Below, in pieces: positions 13,191-21,399 of a stretch of 64,000 nucleotides of DNA. Every line of letters starts with the position of its first letter. The first letter of the stretch is position 1. A program made the position numbers and the translations under genes. Origin of the DNA: Mobula birostris (taxonomy: Eukaryota); assembly GCF_030028105.1 (NCBI RefSeq), contig NC_092371.1, positions 23,116,439-23,180,438 of the forward strand. The letters are read 5' to 3'. The notes under the pieces are model-generated. The model did no database searches, had not been told where the DNA came from, and was given only the letters and a program-made list of their open reading frames with translations.

Positions 13191-16100
13191 TGTTCTGCCT
13201 TCAGGCAATTCGTTCATGGTTTTCAATGTGATTAAACACATTCAGCTTTTATTTTAACAAGCAGTTTCTGATCTGTAGGTCATTTCCTGGTCAGCCAGGA
13301 AGTGGTAAGTGAAAAAAATGCATTGGCTCACAGCAGGCCAAACGTGTAAAAGAATGTGTTAGGAGTAAAAGAAGTTTCTACCTAAAGCCATCCTGTTGTT
13401 TCCCCAGCAGAAACATTGCTTGTAAGTTGATGTTATATTATTTCGAAGTTAATTTAGCGGTATCAACAAAATTTTGCTGAAATAGAAGGTTATTTTTATG
13501 TTTATTAGACACTAATCTAGGTGTTAATAGTTTACACATACACCATTTACCTGTAGTATTTACTTGTTGGAATTTTATAATATTTACCTGCAGGGAATTT
13601 AACTAAGTTCTTACTTCTCTGGGTATTTTTCCTTGTGTGAATGGAACAACGTAATAATTGCCCTGTATTTTGTTTTTCAATTTCACTCCTTAGCCACTAT
13701 GTCATAGAAACATAGAAAATAGGTGGAGTAGGCCATTCGGCCCTTCGAGCCTGCACCGCCATTCAATATGATCATGGCTGATCATCCAACTCAGAACCCT
13801 GTACCTGCCTTCTCTCCATACCCCGATCCCTTTAGCCACAAGGGCCATATCTAACTCCCTCTTAAATATAGCCAATGAACCAGACTCAATTGTTTCCTGT
13901 GGCAGAGAATTCCACAGATTCACCATTCTCTGTGTGAAGAAGTTTTTCCTCATCTCGGTCCTAAAAGGCTTCCCCTTTATCCTTAAACTGTGACCCCTCG
14001 TTCTGGACTTCCCCATCTTCGGGAACAATCTTCCTGCATCTAGCCTGGCCAATCCCTGTAGAATTTTATATGTTTCAATAAGATCCTCCCTCAATCTTCT
14101 AAATTCCAGCGAGTATAAGCCTAGTCGATCCAGTCTTTCTTCACATGAACGTCCTGCCATCCCAGGAATCAATCTGGTGAACCTTCTTTGTACTCACTCT
14201 ATGGCAAGAATGTCTTTCCTCAGATTAGGGGCCCAAAACTGCACACAATACTCCAGGTGTGGTCTCACCAAGGCCTTGTACAACTGCAGTAGTACCTCCC
14301 TGCTCCTGTACTCGAATCCTCTTGCTATGAATGCCAGCATACCATTCGCCTTTTTCACCGCCTGCTGTACCTGTATGCCCACTTTCAATGACTGATGTAC
14401 AATGACACCCAGGTCTCGTTGCACCTCCCCTTTTCCTAATTGGCCACTATTCAGATAATAATCTGTTTTCCTGTTCTTGCCACCAAAGTGGATAACCTCA
14501 CATTTATCCACATTAAATTGCATCTGCCATAAATTTGCCCATTCACCTAACCTATCCAAGTCACCCTGCATCCTCTTAGCATTCTCCTCACAGCTAACAC
14601 TGCCGCCCAGCTTCGTGTCATCCGCAAACTTGGAGATGCTGCATTTCATTCCCTCGTCTAAGTCATTAATATATATTGTAAACAACTGGGGTCCCAGCAC
14701 CGAGCCTTGCGGTATAGCCTTGGGCAAATGAGCGAAAGCACAACTTGAGCCTCGCACATGTCATAGAGTCTGCAATAAAACCAAGGATTTACGAGCTATT
14801 TCCTGACTCTCAAGTCATTTTGAATGGAATTCGGCTGACTGTCTAATTGATGTTACAACTGGTGAGTGAGGTCAGTACAGTGAAAAAGCAGACATCAGTT
14901 GGTGCTTCAACAACTGCAGCTAAAAGTGAAACCTCCTTACATCTAAGAACCTCATCATGGACCAGAAACAAGGTGATAATGCTTTGATATCCCACTCTTT
15001 AAGAGTTCCCAAACATTAACTTCGTGCAGCAGCAAGAGCCCGCACTAAAGCAAAGGTGGTAAAAGCACGCGCTTCATTTGCTGAGAAGGAGGACCATTGC
15101 ATAGGCCGGGGTCTTAGAGGCAGCTGAGAACTGGCAGGAGCGATGAAGTAGGAAAGGGCCAGCAAAGCTGTGTCAGAAAAGGACATTGTGGAGCAAATGG
15201 GCAAATGAGCGAAAGCACAACTTGAACCTCGCACATCCCAGAACCAAACAGCAGAAGAGACACTTGGATAAGCCATATTCAACCAGACAAAGTCTGACAA
15301 CAAACCTGCCCCATCCGTCGAAAACACAATCTTCCTGAAGACAATAGATGAGGAAGTCTACAAGGATGAGTGAAGTCGTTACATTGCTCCTCTCCCCCTT
15401 AGAGTTTCACGGCAGCTCTTACCCAACAATCATGAACACCCATTTCACTTGCAGTACATGTACAGTGAACTCTGAAAAGAAAGCCAGAGATGAGAGAGTA
15501 GGTTGTTGCCCCTATGGGCAAGATTTTTGCGGACAATCTCGTGTGCATCAGAGGCTGCCTGAAACATGCACACTTGAACAGAGGCGAAAGTAACCGCTTT
15601 ATCCTCCCCAAGTTCAGCCACATCTCTGGTAGGGTACCATCATGACTGGGTGGAACATCAAGGCTGTCACTTTATGAAAGAAGTCGTTAGAGCAACAGAT
15701 TTGTGAATCATAGGAGGTAAGAGGCTCATCAACTCAGTTCTATATGAATATGTCATCTGCTAGACACTCTGTGGCAAAATGGAGGAACAGTGCACGGTAG
15801 ACCTACCTTCCGAGCGCCTGCGTACCTGCCCTCCCTTCACATATGCTGGGTTGGATGTCTTCGGGCCCAGGTCAGTCAACGTCAGACGTACAAGGGGAGG
15901 CCGCGCACAAAGCAAACGATGGGCAGTGCTCTTCAGCTGCATGAGCTCAACATGAAATAATTGAATCCACGGACACCTCAAGTTGCATCAATGCACTCAG
16001 GCGCTTTTCCGCAATCTGTAGGCCAGCGAAGCAGTTAAGATCGTACTATGGCATGAATTTTTGTATCAGCCAGTAAGGAACTGCGACTAGAGAAAAAGCA

Positions 16101-17170
16101 ACAGGACTCCAGCGTGCAGAAGTACTTGAATCAACAAGGATACACATAGGAGTTCAGCCCTCCCCCCCCCCCCCACATGCCTCCCACAAGAGCGGCTCGT
16201 GGGAGTGTATGACTGGGGTGGCAAAAAGAATCCTTGACTTTATGCTGCTCCAGGAGAACACTCATCTTACCCATGAAGTCCCGTGCACCCTTATGGTGGA
16301 GGTTGCAGCATAATAAATGTGAGACCTCTTGTTCCAATTTCCACAGATCCCAACTCACCATTTATACTGCAATAATACTCACTCAAAAGCTCAGAGTACA
16401 CCCTCTATTTGGAGACTTTAGGGATAATGATCTTCTCATTCGAGAATGGAAATGGATACAAATTCCCGCCAAAAAGTTCTGGAGCCACGAGTATCTCCCA
16501 ACACTGCAGACCCACCGGACATAGATGAAAGCTCACAGGGATCTACAAGAGGGAGATTCATGCTCATGTCTACCTGCAATGATTGGCCCATGACTAAAGT
16601 TACTGCTACCTTCCCTGGAAGGGATGGAAGAGTCCAGAAGGAAGAGGTCAACACGACAGGTTTTGCCTGAGACCTGCCTCAGAAATTGTTTAGCTGCTTC
16701 CCAAAGAAGAATAGTAGAAACCTCACGAAGGTGGCAGGGAGAGTTTTGGGCAATTCATTTATCTTTTTCTATGTGATTCAACATGTTCAGCTTATATTTT
16801 AATGAGCAGTTTCTATCTATATTAGGTCACTTCCTGTGCAGTCAGGAAGAAGTAAGTAGAAAAGTGCATTGGCTGGCAGGAGGCCAGAGGTTTATGTTAG
16901 GAGCGAAGAAAGTTTCTATCTAAAGCCATCCTGTTGTTTCCCCAGCAGAAGCATTGCTTGTAAGTTGATGTTATATTGTTTACAAGGTTAATCTAAAGGT
17001 ATCAACAAGATTTTGCTGAAATATAATGTTATTTTTATGTTTATTAGACAATAACCTAGATGCTAATGGTTTACACATACTATTTACCTGTAGTATTCAC
17101 TTGTTGAAATCTTATAATATTTACCTGTAGGGAACTAATAAGTGTATATTTAATTGTGTGAATGAAACTA
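13191..17170 (+). mobile_element. BEL/Pao LTR retrotransposon, degenerate and internally deleted
   Basis: Direct LTRs: 13191-14857 (split by a CR1) and about 16742-17170, sharing ctaaagccatcctgttgtttccccagcagaa and flanks. Integrase remnants DLPSERLRTCPPFTYAGLDVFGP...KRWAVLFSC, FWSHEYLPTLQ and WPMTKVTATFPGRDGRV; purine tract before the 3' LTR. Confidence 0.9.
13709..14717 (-). mobile_element. 5'-truncated CR1 LINE inserted in the BEL 5' LTR
   Basis: ORFs 14194-14757 (PQGSVLGP, KFADDTK) and 13702-14172; tail (tttctatg)n; 10-bp TSD atgtcataga at 13699-13708 and 14758-14767. Confidence 0.92.
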
Positions 17171-17875
17171 TGAAAATCTGGCATATTCAGGACTTTGGTG
17201 GTGTTGGTAGAGCTACTAGGACTTGATGTTTCAATCCCTATGGTAACTCGGCACTCTCGATGTTGGCAGTGGGTTTGGAGTGGTGACAAGGAGGGAGGGT
17301 AGGTACATTATTGGGGTCATCAGGTGGGCACCCTCCTTCTTTGACGTTTCGTTGATAAGCCCACGACGTCTCCAGAGGGCTCAACAATGCTACCTGGCAT
17401 CGCAGATACACCCCCCTTGGTTCCGTACCCTCCTGTCTTCATCGTGCAGCCCAGTTGTTGTCTTTCCTTTTAATCCAAATCCAATTGCTGCTTTCTTCTG
17501 CTGCACTTGACAAGGACTTGATTGCTTGTTGGAGGGAGTGACCCCTCACCCCCATCTTCTTCAATAGACTGGTCGTAGGTGTAGCAACGAATCCCCTGCA
17601 TCACTTCTACAGGGAAAATCTTGGTCTTCCAGCCATTCTGGGCAGCTTCAGTTGCCAGTTCAGAGTACTTGGTCTTTTTCCTCTCATAAGCTTCTTCGAC
17701 ACCATCTTCCCATGGTACTGTCAATTCCACAACATATGCCAGCTTGGCGCGTCTGACCGGAGTGTTGTAGCTGCAATGTCTGGGGGAAACACAAGCTTTT
17801 TTTTCCAAGTCCACGTCCATTTTCCAATCCCGAGCAACCTGCAGAATGCTTACATCTTTTGATGTTATATGGGAG
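17170..17875 (-). mobile_element. Hero-clade (restriction-like endonuclease) non-LTR retrotransposon, 5'-truncated
   Basis: Across frameshifts reads ARDWKMDVDLEKKLVFPPDIAATTLR...VVELTVPWEDGVEEAYERKKTKYSEL...GWKTKIFPVEV...AEESSNWIW, typical of the Hero RLE domain; stop at 17439-17441, then 3' UTR. Confidence 0.8.
17313..17416 (-). ncRNA. Candidate rearranged (non-circularly permuted, pseudoknotted) hammerhead ribozyme in the Hero 3' UTR
   Basis: Core CUGAUGA (17323-17317), GAAA (17350-17347) and GUC site (17367-17365). Stem I GUGGGC/GCCCAC and stem III GACGU/ACGUC. Further helices GUUGA/UCAAC, GCCCUC/GAGGGU and GGGG/CCCC. Confidence 0.65.
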
Positions 17876-17989
17876 TGTAAATTTTGCAGATGATTTCCAT
17901 TAATAGTCTAACACTCTTTAAATTAACATTTTTATTAAATATTACATGGTCCGCTGAAAAATGTATGATCACACTGTTCGATTTGAAAG

Positions 17990-19190: not shown

Positions 19191-21399
19191 GGTATTTGAT
19201 GGGCTGGTTTCAAACTGTGTGTAATAATTCATAAGATCACTATCACAAGGAATAGAACAAAGAACATGGAGCTTTTGAATGCTTTAGTGAAACAAGGCAA
19301 ATACACCATACGTCATATTCTAGCTTCTGCTCCCTTCCTTTCCATCCTGATGAAGGGTCTCAGTCTGAAATGTCGACTGTTCATTTCCCTCCATAGATGC
19401 TGCCCGACCTGCTGTGTTCCTCCAGCATTTTATATGCGTTGCTCAAGATTTCCAGCATCTGCAGAATCTTTTGCGTCGGTGTACCATACACCATCTTTGC
19501 TTATTGATTTGTGCAGTCATTTTCAGGACCACTTAATCTACTCTTCCCTCCTACATAGGCCCCCATTTTTCTTATCATTCATGTATCTATCTAAGAGTTT
19601 CATAAAAATGTCCCTACTACATATCCCTCTACCACGACCCCTGGCAACGCATTCCAAGCACCCACCACTCTTTGTGTAAAGAACTTATTTCTGACATCCT
19701 CCCTCTATTTTCCTCAAATCACCTTAAAATGATGCCCCCTTCAATTAGCCATTTCTGCCCTGGGTAAAATGTCTCTGGCTGTCCACTCTATCAATGCTTT
19801 CTATCATTTTGTATACCTCTATCAAGTCACCTCTCATCCTCCTTCACACTAAAGTGAAAGGCCCCAGCTTGCTCAGCCTATCCTCATGAGACATGCTCTT
19901 TAATCCAGGCTGCATCCTGGTGAATCTTCTCTGTACCCTCTCTAAATCTTCCACATCCTTCCTATAATGAGGCAACCAGAACGGAACACAATATTCCAAG
20001 TGTGGTCTAACCAGAGTTTTATAGAGCTGCAACATTATCTCCCAGCCCTTGAACTCAATCCCCTGATTAATGAAGGGCAGCAGACCATAGGCCTTCTTAA
20101 CCACCCTATCAACTTGCACTGCAACTTTGAGATGTCTATGGATGTGGACCCCACAATCACTCTGTTCCTCCACACTGCTAAGACTACTGCTACTAGCCCT
20201 GTTCTCTTGTCTTCAATTATGACCTTCCAAGTGTATCATTTCACATCTTTCTGGATTGGACTCCATGTGCCACTTCTCAGCCCAGCTCTGCCCATTGTCT
20301 CTAAGAATCCTCTCCAATAATTTGCCCACCACTGACAAGTTAATTTTGGGTATTTAAAAAGGAAGTTGATAATTTTTTGAAATATTGGGGGATTGAGGAC
20401 CTAGGAAATTGACACATAAGCGATGAGGCCTCAAGTAGATCAAGCATAATCACTTTGAAGGATGGGGCAGGTCCGGAAATGTGCCCCCCCCCCCCCGGTG
20501 CACAAGCAGCAACAAAGCATCAACCTTCCCCCCTCCCCCACATGATCCAGCAGAAAGCATCAGCCCCACACCCATCAGCAGAAAGATCATACCTTCACCA
20601 ATCACCCTTGTCAACTTGCCAAAAAACTCAATCAAGTTGGTAAGACGTGACTTGCCCCGCACAAAGCCATGCTGACTCTCCCTAATTAGGCTACGGTTTT
20701 CCAAATGCTCATAAATCCTATCCCTAAGAATTCTCTCCAGTAACTTCCCTATCACTGATGTGAGACTCACCGGTCTGTAGTTTTCAGGATTATCCCTTAT
20801 TCCTTTCTTGAATAATGGAACAACATTAGCTACTCACCAGTGCTCTGGGACCTCATCCGTGGCTACAGTGGACACAGGGATATTGGTCAAAAATCTCTTG
20901 CCTCTCTCAATAACCTGGGGTATATTCCATCAAGCCCTGGGGATGTATCCACCTCAATATTCTTTGAGACCCAACACTACCTCCTCCTTTACCTCAAAAC
21001 ACTCTAACATATCAGTACGCTCAGCACTGATTGCTCTATCCTCTATGTCCTTCATCTTGGTAAATACTGATGTAAAGTATTCATTAAGGACCTCACCCAC
21101 GTCCACTGCATCTAAGCAAATGTTCTCCCCTTTTATCCTTGCGAGGTCCTACCCTCTCCCTAGTTACCTTCTTGCTCTTTGTGTACATATAGAATTCGTT
21201 GGGTGTGATCCTCCTTAATCCTACTTGCCAAAGACCTCTTGGCCCCTCTTGGCCTTGCTAATTCCTTTCTTGAGTTCTTTTTTGGCTTCTTTGTAATCCT
21301 CAAAGACTCTGTTTGATTCTGCCTTCCTGAGCTTTCCATACTTTTTCTTTCTCTTCTTGACTAAATTCATCTCCTCCCTCAACATTCAAGTTCTCTTAC

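What the first reader, a model, noticed from the sequence alone, without database searches (positions are those of the whole stretch)
17313..17416. Rearranged, pseudoknotted hammerhead ribozyme in the 3' UTR of a Hero retrotransposon
Seen, minus strand, starting about 25 nt after the ORF stop: GGGG-[hairpin GUGUAUCUG/CAGGUAGCAU]-U-GUUGA-GCCCUC-UGGA-GACGUC^GUGGGC-UUA-UCAAC-GAAACGUC-AAAGAAG-GAGGGU-GCCCAC-CUGAUGA-CCCC. Every invariant hammerhead nucleotide is present and correctly abutted. The 6 nt after the GUC site pair perfectly with the 6 nt just before CUGAUGA (stem I). GACGU pairs with ACGUC of GAAACGUC (stem III), extended by GCCCUC/GAGGGU. The strand order (NUH, GAAA, CUGAUGA) fits none of types I-III, so stems I and III form a pseudoknot. 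Stem II is replaced by two helices to upstream strands (UCAAC/GUUGA before GAAA; CCCC/GGGG after CUGAUGA). Six compatible helices around an exact core look unlikely by chance. Known: R2-type elements use 5' HDV-like ribozymes, and I recall non-circularly permuted hammerheads being reported, but I cannot check whether this Hero-linked form is catalogued. Inference: a self-cleaving or regulated RNA module for 3' processing or template selection of Hero RNA, with predicted cleavage between 17365 and 17364. Standard hammerhead models would probably miss it.
Basis: partly seen in the sequence, partly recalled or inferred. Interest (0 to 1): 0.85.

Follow-up and report, generated by a model that had tools for sequence, protein, structure and literature searches.

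The report
Permuted hammerhead ribozyme in retrotransposon tail
The tail of a jumping gene carries an RNA fold that has every part of the self-cutting hammerhead ribozyme, wired in an order not yet described, and distant relatives of the element keep the fold through matched mutations, so it is very likely real and functional.

Summary

It is not chance. A minimal site-GAAA-CUGAnGA descriptor hits the window once, against 0.045 hits per shuffled window.

The motif is conserved. All 10 homologous elements from metagenome contigs (54-77% protein identity) show it downstream of the stop codon as far as their sequence reaches.
- On 10 distinct sequences, 91.7% of cells pair, against 36-47% when partners are slid.
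- 25 of 37 pairs show changes on both sides, and all six helices are covered.
- Core conservation follows hammerhead rules: N7 is U, C, A or G; H17 is C or U; two sequences carry U3/A8 in place of C3/G8.

The wiring matches the published type-SGC hammerhead from stem III through CUGAnGA. The stem II 5' strand and its bridging strand, however, sit upstream, tethered by a four-way junction and an outer closing helix. A k-turn-like loop links stem III to the bridging helix.

No Rfam model detects the motif, and I found no paper on it. Cleavage itself and the biological role are untested. The 'Hero' label is confirmed only as far as R2-group LINE.

First readers flagged similar motifs in other pieces of this genome.

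The parts
17207..17872 (-). 5'-truncated, frameshifted copy of a very high-copy R2-group (Hero-like) LINE. Its 3' end is at 17207.
   Evidence: summed contig depth in DNA run X1 is about 7,000-73,000 inside and 7-30 outside. There are 91 loose ends with unrelated flanks at 17207, and the family sequence continues beyond 17872; the C-terminal ORF piece has 30 homologues.
17439..17441 (-). Stop codon of the element's ORF, placed by homology.
   Evidence: translation, compared with the ends of P0007 and P0008.
17426..17433 (-). Outer closing helix, 5' strand. It pairs with 17301-17294.
   Evidence: MFE fold. duplex test: 22 of 1000 shuffles do as well in the window; 0 of 1000 in each of L005, L006, L007 and L008, where the helix sequences differ.
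17413..17416 (-). P0, 5' strand. It pairs with 17316-17313, directly after A9.
   Evidence: 3 of 4 pairs have a both-side change, all from the L002/L004 lineage; no such change among the 8 closer sequences.
17386..17412 (-). Hairpin Pa: 11 pairs, one conserved bulge, 4-nt loop.
   Evidence: 8 of 11 pairs have both-side changes; the family consensus restores 3 pairs that are decayed in this copy (17402, 17387, 17386).
17381..17385 (-). Stem II, 5' strand (positions 10.1-10.5), displaced upstream of the cleavage-site block.
   Evidence: 4 of 5 pairs have both-side changes. Stem II was not part of the covariance model used to align.
17375..17380 (-). Helix T, 5' strand. It pairs with 17335-17330 and bridges the far ends of stems II and I.
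   Evidence: 4 of 6 pairs have both-side changes, from L002/L004 only; none among the 8 closer sequences.
17371..17374 (-). Junction strand UGGA, the candidate non-bulged strand of a k-turn.
   Evidence: it ends in GA in 9 of 9 distinct rows that cover it.
17365..17370 (-). Stem III 5' strand (17370-17366) and C17 (17365). Predicted cleavage is between 17365 and 17364.
   Evidence: 2 of 5 stem III pairs have both-side changes. H17 is C in 3 and U in 6 of 9 distinct rows, never G.
17359..17364 (-). Stem I, 5' strand.
   Evidence: 4 of 6 pairs have both-side changes. Stem I was not part of the covariance model.
17356..17358 (-). 3-nt linker from stem I to stem II.
   Evidence: 3 nt in 7 of 9 distinct rows, 5 in L001, 4 in L002. 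Eckert 2023 gives 'typically three nucleotides' for type SGC.
17343..17355 (-). Stem II 3' strand (17355-17351), G12 A13 A14 (17350-17348) and stem III 3' strand (17347-17343).
   Evidence: GAA followed by A15.1 in 8 of 9 distinct rows. The exception is L009, a copy with a decayed ORF.
17336..17342 (-). 7-nt junction strand, NNN-GA-AG, the candidate bulged strand of a k-turn.
   Evidence: a variable triplet followed by GA in 7 of 9 distinct rows. L010 has a deletion here and L009 is decayed.
17324..17335 (-). Helix T 3' strand (17335-17330) and stem I 3' strand (17329-17324).
17317..17323 (-). Core CUGAUGA (C3-A9).
   Evidence: CUGAnGA in 6 of 9 distinct rows, with n = U, U, U, A, C, G. UUGACAA in 2 rows (L005, L008). 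CCGAUGA in 1 row (L009); no variant at 10% or more here in 4 runs.
17313..17316 (-). P0, 3' strand.
17294..17301 (-). Outer closing helix, 3' strand.
17207..17293 (-). Remaining 3' tail of the element. Its last ~35 nt are alike across lineages.
   Evidence: downstream sequences of L005-L008 and L010 compared by eye; boundary at 17207.

Best explanation
The 3' UTR of this R2-group (Hero-like) LINE contains a closed RNA domain of about 140 nt, 17433-17294 on the minus strand, built round a complete hammerhead catalytic core.

The strands come in this order: closing strand, hairpin, stem II 5', bridge 5', stem III 5', cleavage site, stem I 5', 3-nt linker, stem II 3', GAAA, stem III 3', bridge 3', stem I 3', CUGAnGA, closing strand.

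From stem III 5' to CUGAnGA this is the published non-circular 'type SGC' order. The difference is that the stem II 5' strand and its bridging strand lie in front instead of behind. The chain is therefore broken between A9 and 10.1. A four-way junction (P0, hairpin Pa, stem II, core) plus an outer helix holds it together there.

Shown: the strings, their conservation, and compensatory changes in all helices.

Inferred:
- The RNA folds into a hammerhead-like active site and cuts itself after C17, between 17365 and 17364.
- That cut would give a 158-nt 3' piece with a 5'-OH.
- The 3' piece would stay base-paired to the upstream piece through stem II, helix T, stem III, P0 and the outer helix, about 28 pairs in all.

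Speculative: the cut, or a cut-and-reseal balance, marks or gates the RNA for assembly with its reverse transcriptase rather than simply destroying the template.
For: Presence and non-randomness.

Homologous elements were found through their protein alone, so the sample is not biased by the RNA motif. Of 10 loci, 7 pass the strict descriptor, 2 carry decayed versions and 1 is cut off by its contig end inside the hairpin.

Covariation on the MAFFT alignment of 8 sequences:
- 92.8% of cells paired, against 39-51% when slid.
- 12 of 37 pairs changed on both sides; 1 of 500 shuffles reached this.

Covariation on 10 distinct sequences:
- 91.7% paired, against 36-47% when slid.
- 25 of 37 pairs changed on both sides; 0 of 500 shuffles reached this.
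- Per helix: P0 3/4, Pa 8/11, II 4/5, T 4/6, III 2/5, I 4/6.
- Stems I and II were not in the aligning model.

Core pattern:
- N7 takes all four bases.
- H17 is C or U.
- GAAA is kept in 8 of 9 distinct rows.
- L005 and L008 have U3 with A8. The C3-G8 pair is known to tolerate double swaps (passage), and U3-A8 occurs naturally in Penelope-element hammerheads (passage).

Other support:
- The outer helix has different sequences in each lineage, and 0 of 1000 shuffles did as well in each of four loci.
- Four loci with the motif, or its start, have ORFs open for 682 aa or more.
- The family consensus repairs three pairs that are broken in this decayed copy.
- The 3-nt linker and the I-II bridging helix match the text description of type SGC.
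Against: - No cleavage assay was possible and no RNA end data exist. All 24 runs were contigs, none of raw reads.
- Both-side changes in P0 and T come from one divergent lineage only (L002 = L004), in an alignment fitted by a model that contained those helices. Among the 8 closer sequences they show none.
- The backbone break between A9 and 10.1 has no precedent. Eckert et al. state that no long insertions occur next to CUGAnGA.
- In DNA run X1 the depth 55-110 nt upstream of the site (about 50,000-73,000) equals the depth downstream. Contigs of all four runs span the site. Most copied templates were therefore uncut, resealed or bridged.
- In Penelope elements the hammerhead was dispensable for insertion in vitro and needed protein to cut.
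- The sample is only 10 distinct sequences.
Confidence: 0.72

Rival explanations
1. It is a non-catalytic scaffold. The fold is real and selected, but it serves as the binding site in the 3' UTR for the element's reverse transcriptase. The hammerhead-like core is kept for its shape, not for cutting.
For: - R2-group proteins recognise structured 3' UTRs (established knowledge, recalled).
- Most genomic copies run through the predicted site.
- The Penelope-element hammerhead was not needed for insertion in vitro.
- The A9/10.1 break could disturb the active site.
Against: - The conservation follows catalytic rules position by position. Only N7 is free, H17 is never G, and C3/G8 change together to U3/A8.
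- Nothing but the hammerhead active site is known to demand this whole set.
Confidence: 0.2
2. It is an active ribozyme whose job is to release the 158-nt tail as a separate template. This would seed tail-only, SINE-like copies that start at the cut.
For: One old copy starts at 17363, 1 nt from the predicted new 5' end. Runs of two organisms show it with the same flank (loose ends at 17363; records 3, 18 and 26).
Against: - It is a single locus among thousands of copies.
- The shown list of the best-supported loose ends has no pile-up at 17364 in DNA run X1. That list leaves 245 entries out.
- Depth recovers fully upstream of the motif.
Confidence: 0.05
3. It is a chance resemblance, or a canonical or dimeric hammerhead that has been mis-read.
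For: No Rfam hammerhead model matches.
Against: - Chance expectation is 0.045 per window for the minimal descriptor alone.
- All helices covary.
- The order site-GAAA-CUGAnGA cannot be drawn as type I, II or III.
- Every helix is satisfied within one molecule.
Confidence: 0.02

Closest known systems
Type-SGC non-circularly permuted hammerhead ribozyme (HRIMA-1 motif and variants; Eckert et al., NAR 2023, PMC10085705; sections 13, 15 and 18 read, plus passages)
   Same: - Order site, GAAA, CUGAnGA.
- Stem I joined to stem II by a linker of about 3 nt.
- A helix ties the other sides of stems I and II together.
- That helix is connected to the far end of stem III.
- Stems I and III cross as pseudoknots.
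   Different: - Here the stem II 5' strand and the bridging strand lie upstream of the site block instead of after CUGAnGA. 'Block C', which the paper assumes cannot be interrupted, is therefore split.
- An extra hairpin, P0 and an outer helix close the gap as a four-way junction.
- Here it is encoded in animal DNA inside a LINE. [quoted passage not shown]
- I could not see the paper's supplementary figures S6-S8, S10 and S18.
Type-CSG hammerhead (same paper)
   Same: If P0 is closed into a loop, this motif reads C-S-G.
   Different: It would need a two-helix insertion between A9 and stem II, with the RNA ends lying inside that insertion. Only two type-CSG sequences were reported.
Canonical hammerheads of retroelements (Penelope-like elements, retrozymes)
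   Same: - Same catalytic core, including natural U3-A8 variants.
- Association with a retroelement.
- Role still unclear.
   Different: - Those are type I or minimal forms that lie in pseudo-LTRs or tandem repeats and often act as dimers.
- This one is a single, self-contained, permuted domain in the 3' UTR of an R2-group LINE.
- Flanks at the element's 3' end are heterogeneous, so there is no tandem arrangement.
HDV-like ribozymes of R2 and other LINEs
   Same: A self-cleaving ribozyme built into an R2-group element (mentioned).
   Different: - Different fold.
- Those sit at the 5' end and free the element RNA from a co-transcript.
- This one sits after the stop codon, about 158 nt from the 3' end.
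Kink-turn (k-turn) motif (consensus recalled, from no call)
   Same: Between stem III and helix T: a regular stem, a variable 3-nt bulge, then GA facing GA on the other strand. The pattern is also kept in the divergent L002 lineage.
   Different: This is a sequence signature only. No 3D evidence and no protein partner are known.

Membership tests
Hammerhead ribozyme (core) | Conserved core: C3 U4 G5 A6 N7 G8 A9, G12 A13 A14, the A15.1-U16.1 pair, and H17 not G. | tested here: met
   Of 9 distinct rows, 6 have the strict core with N7 = U, C, A or G. Two have U3/A8 as a paired change. One (L009, decayed ORF) is broken at U4 and G12. H17 is C in 3 rows and U in 6.
Hammerhead ribozyme (core) | Stems I, II and III abut the core and are kept by compensatory change. 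| tested here: met
   pairs with both-side changes are I 4/6, II 4/5 and III 2/5, and 94-98% of cells are paired. (MAFFT only): I 2/6, II 2/5, III 2/5.
Hammerhead ribozyme (core) | Site-specific self-cleavage 3' of H17. | not testable with these tools
   There is no bench assay here. Only contigs were available, not raw RNA reads.
Hammerhead types I, II, III (Rfam models) | Cyclic strand order CUGAnGA, GAAA, UH forming a three-way junction without pseudoknots. | tested here: not met
   The order is UH, GAAA, CUGAnGA. There is no Rfam match in the window or in 4 loci, even at E up to 1-10.
Type-SGC hammerhead (Eckert 2023) | Blocks S, G and C in that order, each uninterrupted, with the stem II 5' strand directly after CUGAnGA. 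| tested here: not met
   After A9 comes P0 (CCCC), not a partner of the strand before GAAA. The covarying partner lies upstream of block S, at 17385-17381.
Type-SGC hammerhead (Eckert 2023) | A ~3-nt linker from stem I to stem II, and a helix bridging the other sides of stems I and II. | tested here: met
   the linker is 3 nt in 7 of 9 distinct rows. Helix T abuts the stem II 5' strand in all 9 rows and the stem I 3' strand in 8 of 9, with 1 nt between in L002. T has 4/6 pairs with both-side changes, from one lineage.
Hero clade of R2-group non-LTR retrotransposons | A single ORF with a reverse transcriptase followed by a C-terminal PD-(D/E)XK-type endonuclease (definition from the passage). 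| tested here: inconclusive
   - RT: Pfam RVT_1 at E 3e-15 to 6e-17. The best solved relatives are R2 proteins.
- C-terminal domain: no Pfam hit and no PDB profile hit. The AlphaFold model is poor, pLDDT 49.
- An RPD...E.T...K pattern can be seen only by eye.
Hero clade of R2-group non-LTR retrotransposons | RT phylogeny places the element with reference Hero elements. | not tested
   No reference Hero sequences were available from any tool.
k-turn | C stem, 3-nt bulge, tandem sheared G-A pairs, NC stem (recalled consensus). | tested here: inconclusive
   The sequence signature is present in 7 of 9 distinct rows on the bulged strand and 9 of 9 on the other strand. Geometry cannot be tested.

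The most novel reading that the evidence does not exclude
This is an active hammerhead of a topological class not yet described. The CUGAnGA block is split from its stem II strand, closed by a four-way junction and braced by a k-turn. It would be the first non-circularly permuted ribozyme found encoded in animal DNA, present in thousands of copies. It would be an integral, selected part of the 3' UTR of a vertebrate R2-group LINE lineage. There, a reversible nick that keeps both halves paired, possibly opened by ribosomes terminating a few nucleotides upstream, would decide which transcripts are handed to the reverse transcriptase.
Probability: 0.3. Interest if true: 0.92.

Novelty: new variant of a known kind. 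Interest (0 to 1): 0.8.

Why it matters
- Non-circular permutation of an RNA fold has so far been documented for a handful of hammerheads from uncultured RNA replicons (Eckert 2023). That paper assumed that the three core blocks cannot be interrupted.
- This motif breaks that assumption. It shows such permutations in ordinary animal genomic DNA, and in very high copy number.
- It would add a ribozyme to the 3' UTR of the R2 group of LINEs, which are now being developed as gene-insertion tools. Until now only 5' HDV-like ribozymes were known there.
- Standard covariance models miss it entirely, so other permuted ribozymes may be hiding in repeats.
- The predicted cleavage site, the compensatory pairs and the natural U3/A8 variant give direct bench tests.

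Tried and rejected
- Rfam at permissive thresholds on the region, the whole window and four loci: nothing relevant. This is expected for a permuted fold.
Instead I used the search for related loci:
  - viral contigs: 0 relatives among 72 pattern matches;
  - metagenome contigs: 10 loci among 160 pattern matches;
  - bacterial and archaeal genomes: 0 among 85.
- MAFFT misaligned the divergent L002/L004 lineage (A3). I therefore aligned with a covariance model that held only the nested helices. The first run, at E up to 10, also pulled in 6 spurious weak matches (A5). I did not use A5.
- C-terminal protein domain: no Pfam hit, no PDB profile hit, poor AlphaFold model. I ran no fold search because the model was too poor. 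'Endonuclease' stays unconfirmed.
- RNA-end evidence: all 24 runs offered were contigs and the 'RNA' labels were guesses. Table 6 lists no start or end pile-ups. Contig depth steps in the 'RNA?' runs fall near 17311, not at the predicted site, and the tool warns that such depth cannot rank parts. I draw nothing from them.
- Idea of coupling to translation termination: the outer helix 5' strand starts 5 nt after the stop in the window, and it overlaps or abuts the ORF end in L005, L006 and L008. It lies about 40 nt away in L007 and more than 100 nt away in L001 and L002. The idea is not general and is kept only as speculation.
- Tandem-array idea (as in Penelope elements): flanks at the 3' end are heterogeneous, with agreement 0.37 over 91 contigs. 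Rejected.
- Literature: I found no paper linking Hero or R2-group 3' UTRs with hammerheads. Subscription journals are largely outside that library. Supplements were closed, so the supplementary figures of Eckert 2023 were not seen.
Full report
WHAT IS THERE

The upstream reading frame is a decayed C-terminal piece of a retrotransposon protein.
- One frame gives 145 open codons.
- After a frameshift, 17504-17439 translates to a tail ending ...KRKDNNWAAR*.
- This is the same tail as in homologous protein fragments P0007 and P0008.
- The stop is therefore TGA at 17441-17439, and the G run of the motif starts 22 nt later.

Laying contigs of four public runs on 17150-17950 shows a repeat of very high copy number.
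- In DNA run X1 the summed depth is about 7,000-73,000 between 17207 and 17872, against 7-30 outside.
- The 3' end is sharp at 17207: 91 contigs continue from there into unrelated sequence.
- The family sequence continues beyond 17872, so this copy is 5'-truncated.

IS IT MORE THAN CHANCE?

I used a descriptor that asks only for UH, then GAAA, then [CU]UGAn[GA]A, with stems I and III of at least 5 pairs abutting the core. It hits the window once on the minus strand and never on the plus strand. It hits 0.045 times per shuffled window, both strands, over 200 shuffles. Stem II, helix T, P0 and the hairpin come on top of that.

CONSERVATION

I therefore searched metagenome contigs with an alignment of the C-terminal protein domain only, which cannot be biased by the RNA.
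- Ten loci came back, 54-77% identical in protein.
- In all ten the motif follows the stop codon as far as the sequence reaches.
- Seven pass the strict descriptor: L001, L002, L004, L005, L006, L007 and L008.
- L010 has a 5-nt deletion in stem III.
- L009 is a decayed copy; its open frame runs only 47 codons.
- L003 ends at its contig edge inside the hairpin.
- L002, L003, L004 and L006 have frames open for 682-685 codons up to the edge of the fetched DNA, so they look like intact elements.

COVARIATION

On a plain MAFFT alignment of the window and 7 loci (A2), I gave the six-helix structure with pseudoknots.
- 92.8% of cells pair, against 39-51% when the partners are slid by 1-3 columns.
- 12 of 37 pairs changed on both sides; 1 of 500 shuffles reached this.
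- The changes lie in the hairpin (6), stem II (2), stem III (2) and stem I (2). There are none in P0 or T.

The L002/L004 lineage has the same architecture with different letters in every helix. MAFFT could not align it. I built a covariance model holding only the nested helices P0, Pa, T and III and used it to align all matches with E up to 1 (11 rows, 10 distinct). On that alignment:
- 91.7% of cells pair, against 36-47% when slid.
- 25 of 37 pairs changed on both sides; 0 of 500 shuffles reached this, with a shuffled mean of 9.3.
- Every helix is covered: P0 3/4, Pa 8/11, II 4/5, T 4/6, III 2/5, I 4/6.

Caveats: the support for P0 and T comes from this one lineage, in an alignment fitted to those helices. 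Stems I and II were not in the model. Ten sequences is a small sample.

THE CORE FOLLOWS HAMMERHEAD RULES

All counts below are over the 9 distinct rows that cover the core.
- CUGAnGA is strict in 6 rows, with n = U, U, U, A, C, G.
- GAA plus A15.1 is kept in 8 rows.
- H17 is C in 3 rows and U in 6, never G.
- L005 and L008 read UUGACAA, that is U3 together with A8.

C3 and G8 pair in the active ribozyme, and double swaps partly restore activity (passage in PMC11167929). U3-A8 is a known natural covariation in hammerheads of Penelope-like elements (passage in PMC4209133).

Within this genome no variant reaching 10% was reported in CUGAUGA (17323-17317). The common variants are all tolerated ones:
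- H17 C to U, about 16% in X1.
- C11.1 to U, giving G-U, about 12%.
- A stem III C to U, giving U-G.

One diverged contig carries changes at 17346, 17349 and 17375.

The family consensus repairs three pairs that this copy has lost, at 17402, 17387 and 17386.

ANATOMY, REVISED

The order of strands is: P0 5', hairpin Pa, stem II 5', T 5', a 4-nt junction, stem III 5', C17, stem I 5', a 3-nt linker, stem II 3', GAAA, stem III 3', a 7-nt junction, T 3', stem I 3', CUGAUGA, P0 3'.

- UCAAC/GUUGA is stem II proper; its G-C pair abuts G12.
- The chain is broken between A9 and 10.1. There P0, Pa, stem II and the core meet with almost no unpaired bases, as a four-way junction.
- Helix T continues the far end of the stem II 5' strand and of the stem I 3' strand without a gap. 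It therefore ties stems I and II together.
- The junction between stem III and T has the sequence signature of a k-turn. One strand has a variable triplet followed by GA (7 of 9 distinct rows). The other strand ends in GA (9 of 9). The idea came from an earlier first-reader note (s1-895578). The k-turn consensus is recalled, and I could test only the sequence pattern.
- An outer helix closes the whole domain. In the window it is 17433-17426 with 17301-17294.
- In each lineage the 35 nt before and the 45 nt after the motif pair, with different sequences. As good a duplex arose in 0 of 1000 shuffles in each of L005, L006, L007 and L008. The figures for the others were L004 5, L002 6, L010 15, the window 22 and the decayed L009 219, all of 1000.

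COMPARISON WITH WHAT IS KNOWN

Eckert et al. 2023 (PMC10085705; I read sections 13, 15 and 18 and passages, not the supplements) describe non-circular hammerhead permutations SGC, CSG and GCS.

Their type SGC has:
- the same order of site, GAAA and CUGAnGA;
- a linker of typically three nucleotides from stem I to stem II;
- a helix joining the other sides of stems I and II;
- a connection of 0-44 nt from that helix to stem III.

The present motif matches all of this from stem III 5' through CUGAnGA. It differs in two ways.
- The stem II 5' strand and the bridging strand stand in front. This splits 'block C', which that paper assumed to be uninterruptible.
- Its source differs. Their RNAs came from metatranscriptomes, and none was found in the genome of a known organism apart from one bacterial type-GCS candidate.

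Rfam 15 has no match here.

Seven literature searches found no paper that connects Hero or R2-group 3' UTRs with a hammerhead.

THE ELEMENT

The long ORFs of L002, L003 and L006 carry Pfam RVT_1. The best solved relatives of the L006 ORF are R2 retrotransposon proteins.

About 480 residues follow the RT. The last domain has no Pfam or PDB match and folds poorly in AlphaFold (pLDDT 49). 'R2-group LINE' is therefore supported, and 'Hero' and 'endonuclease' are plausible but unproven. The definition of the R2 group comes from a passage in PMC3636483.

HOW IT PROBABLY WORKS

Shown: a selected fold with a complete hammerhead core.

Inferred: self-cleavage after C17, between 17365 and 17364. This would give a 158-nt 3' piece (17364-17207) that stays paired to the upstream piece through stem II, T, stem III, P0 and the outer helix.

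Evidence against a simple 'cut and discard':
- Genomic copies mostly run through the site.
- Depth upstream of the motif equals depth downstream in the DNA run.
- Contigs of all four runs span the site.

Templates were therefore uncut, resealed or bridged. I consider a controlled or reversible nick that serves RNP assembly or template choice the most likely role, but this is speculation. Even for Penelope elements the role of the hammerhead is unsettled.

One old copy begins at 17363, 1 nt from the predicted new 5' end, and is shared by two organisms. This is a single case and proves nothing.

EARLIER NOTES OF THIS SCAN

First readers flagged similar permuted hammerheads at Hero-like 3' UTRs in at least eight other pieces of this genome. 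These notes are unchecked and are not counted as support. They do fit the very high copy number seen.

Noticed in passing
L001:2061-2121; L002 and L004:2118-2177: A further conserved module of about 60 nt lies between the stop codon and the hammerhead domain in two lineages. It is absent from the window lineage. It folds into two adjacent hairpins closed by a stem and has no Rfam match. The read-through tail of protein P0020 suggests the same module occurs in another contig.
   Followed up: partly
window 17218-17363 (minus strand copy elsewhere in the genome): An old, diverged copy of the element tail starts at 17363, 1 nt from the predicted cleavage product end. It is followed by the same unrelated flank in runs of organisms A and B (loose ends at 17363; records 3, 18, 26).
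   Followed up: partly
window 17204-17311 versus 17312-17419: In the three runs guessed to be RNA, summed contig depth over the last ~100 nt of the element is 1.5 to 8 times that over the ribozyme part. The DNA run shows no such step (table 2). The tool warns that contig depth cannot rank parts.
   Followed up: no
window 17207-17245 and the matching ends of L005-L008, L010: The last ~35 nt of the element are alike across lineages that differ elsewhere in the 3' UTR. There is no poly(A) or microsatellite tail at the 17207 boundary. This is possibly the site where reverse transcription starts.
   Followed up: no
window 13705-14760 (minus) and 19847-20833 (minus): These are open stretches whose translations look like reverse-transcriptase fragments of other LINE families. 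They are unrelated to the Hero-like copy. I did not search them.
   Followed up: no
window 17885-17959 (plus): A weak match to the C/D-box snoRNA model SNORD28: 25 bits against a gathering score of 50, E 0.18. It lies just outside the element copy and is probably chance.
   Followed up: no
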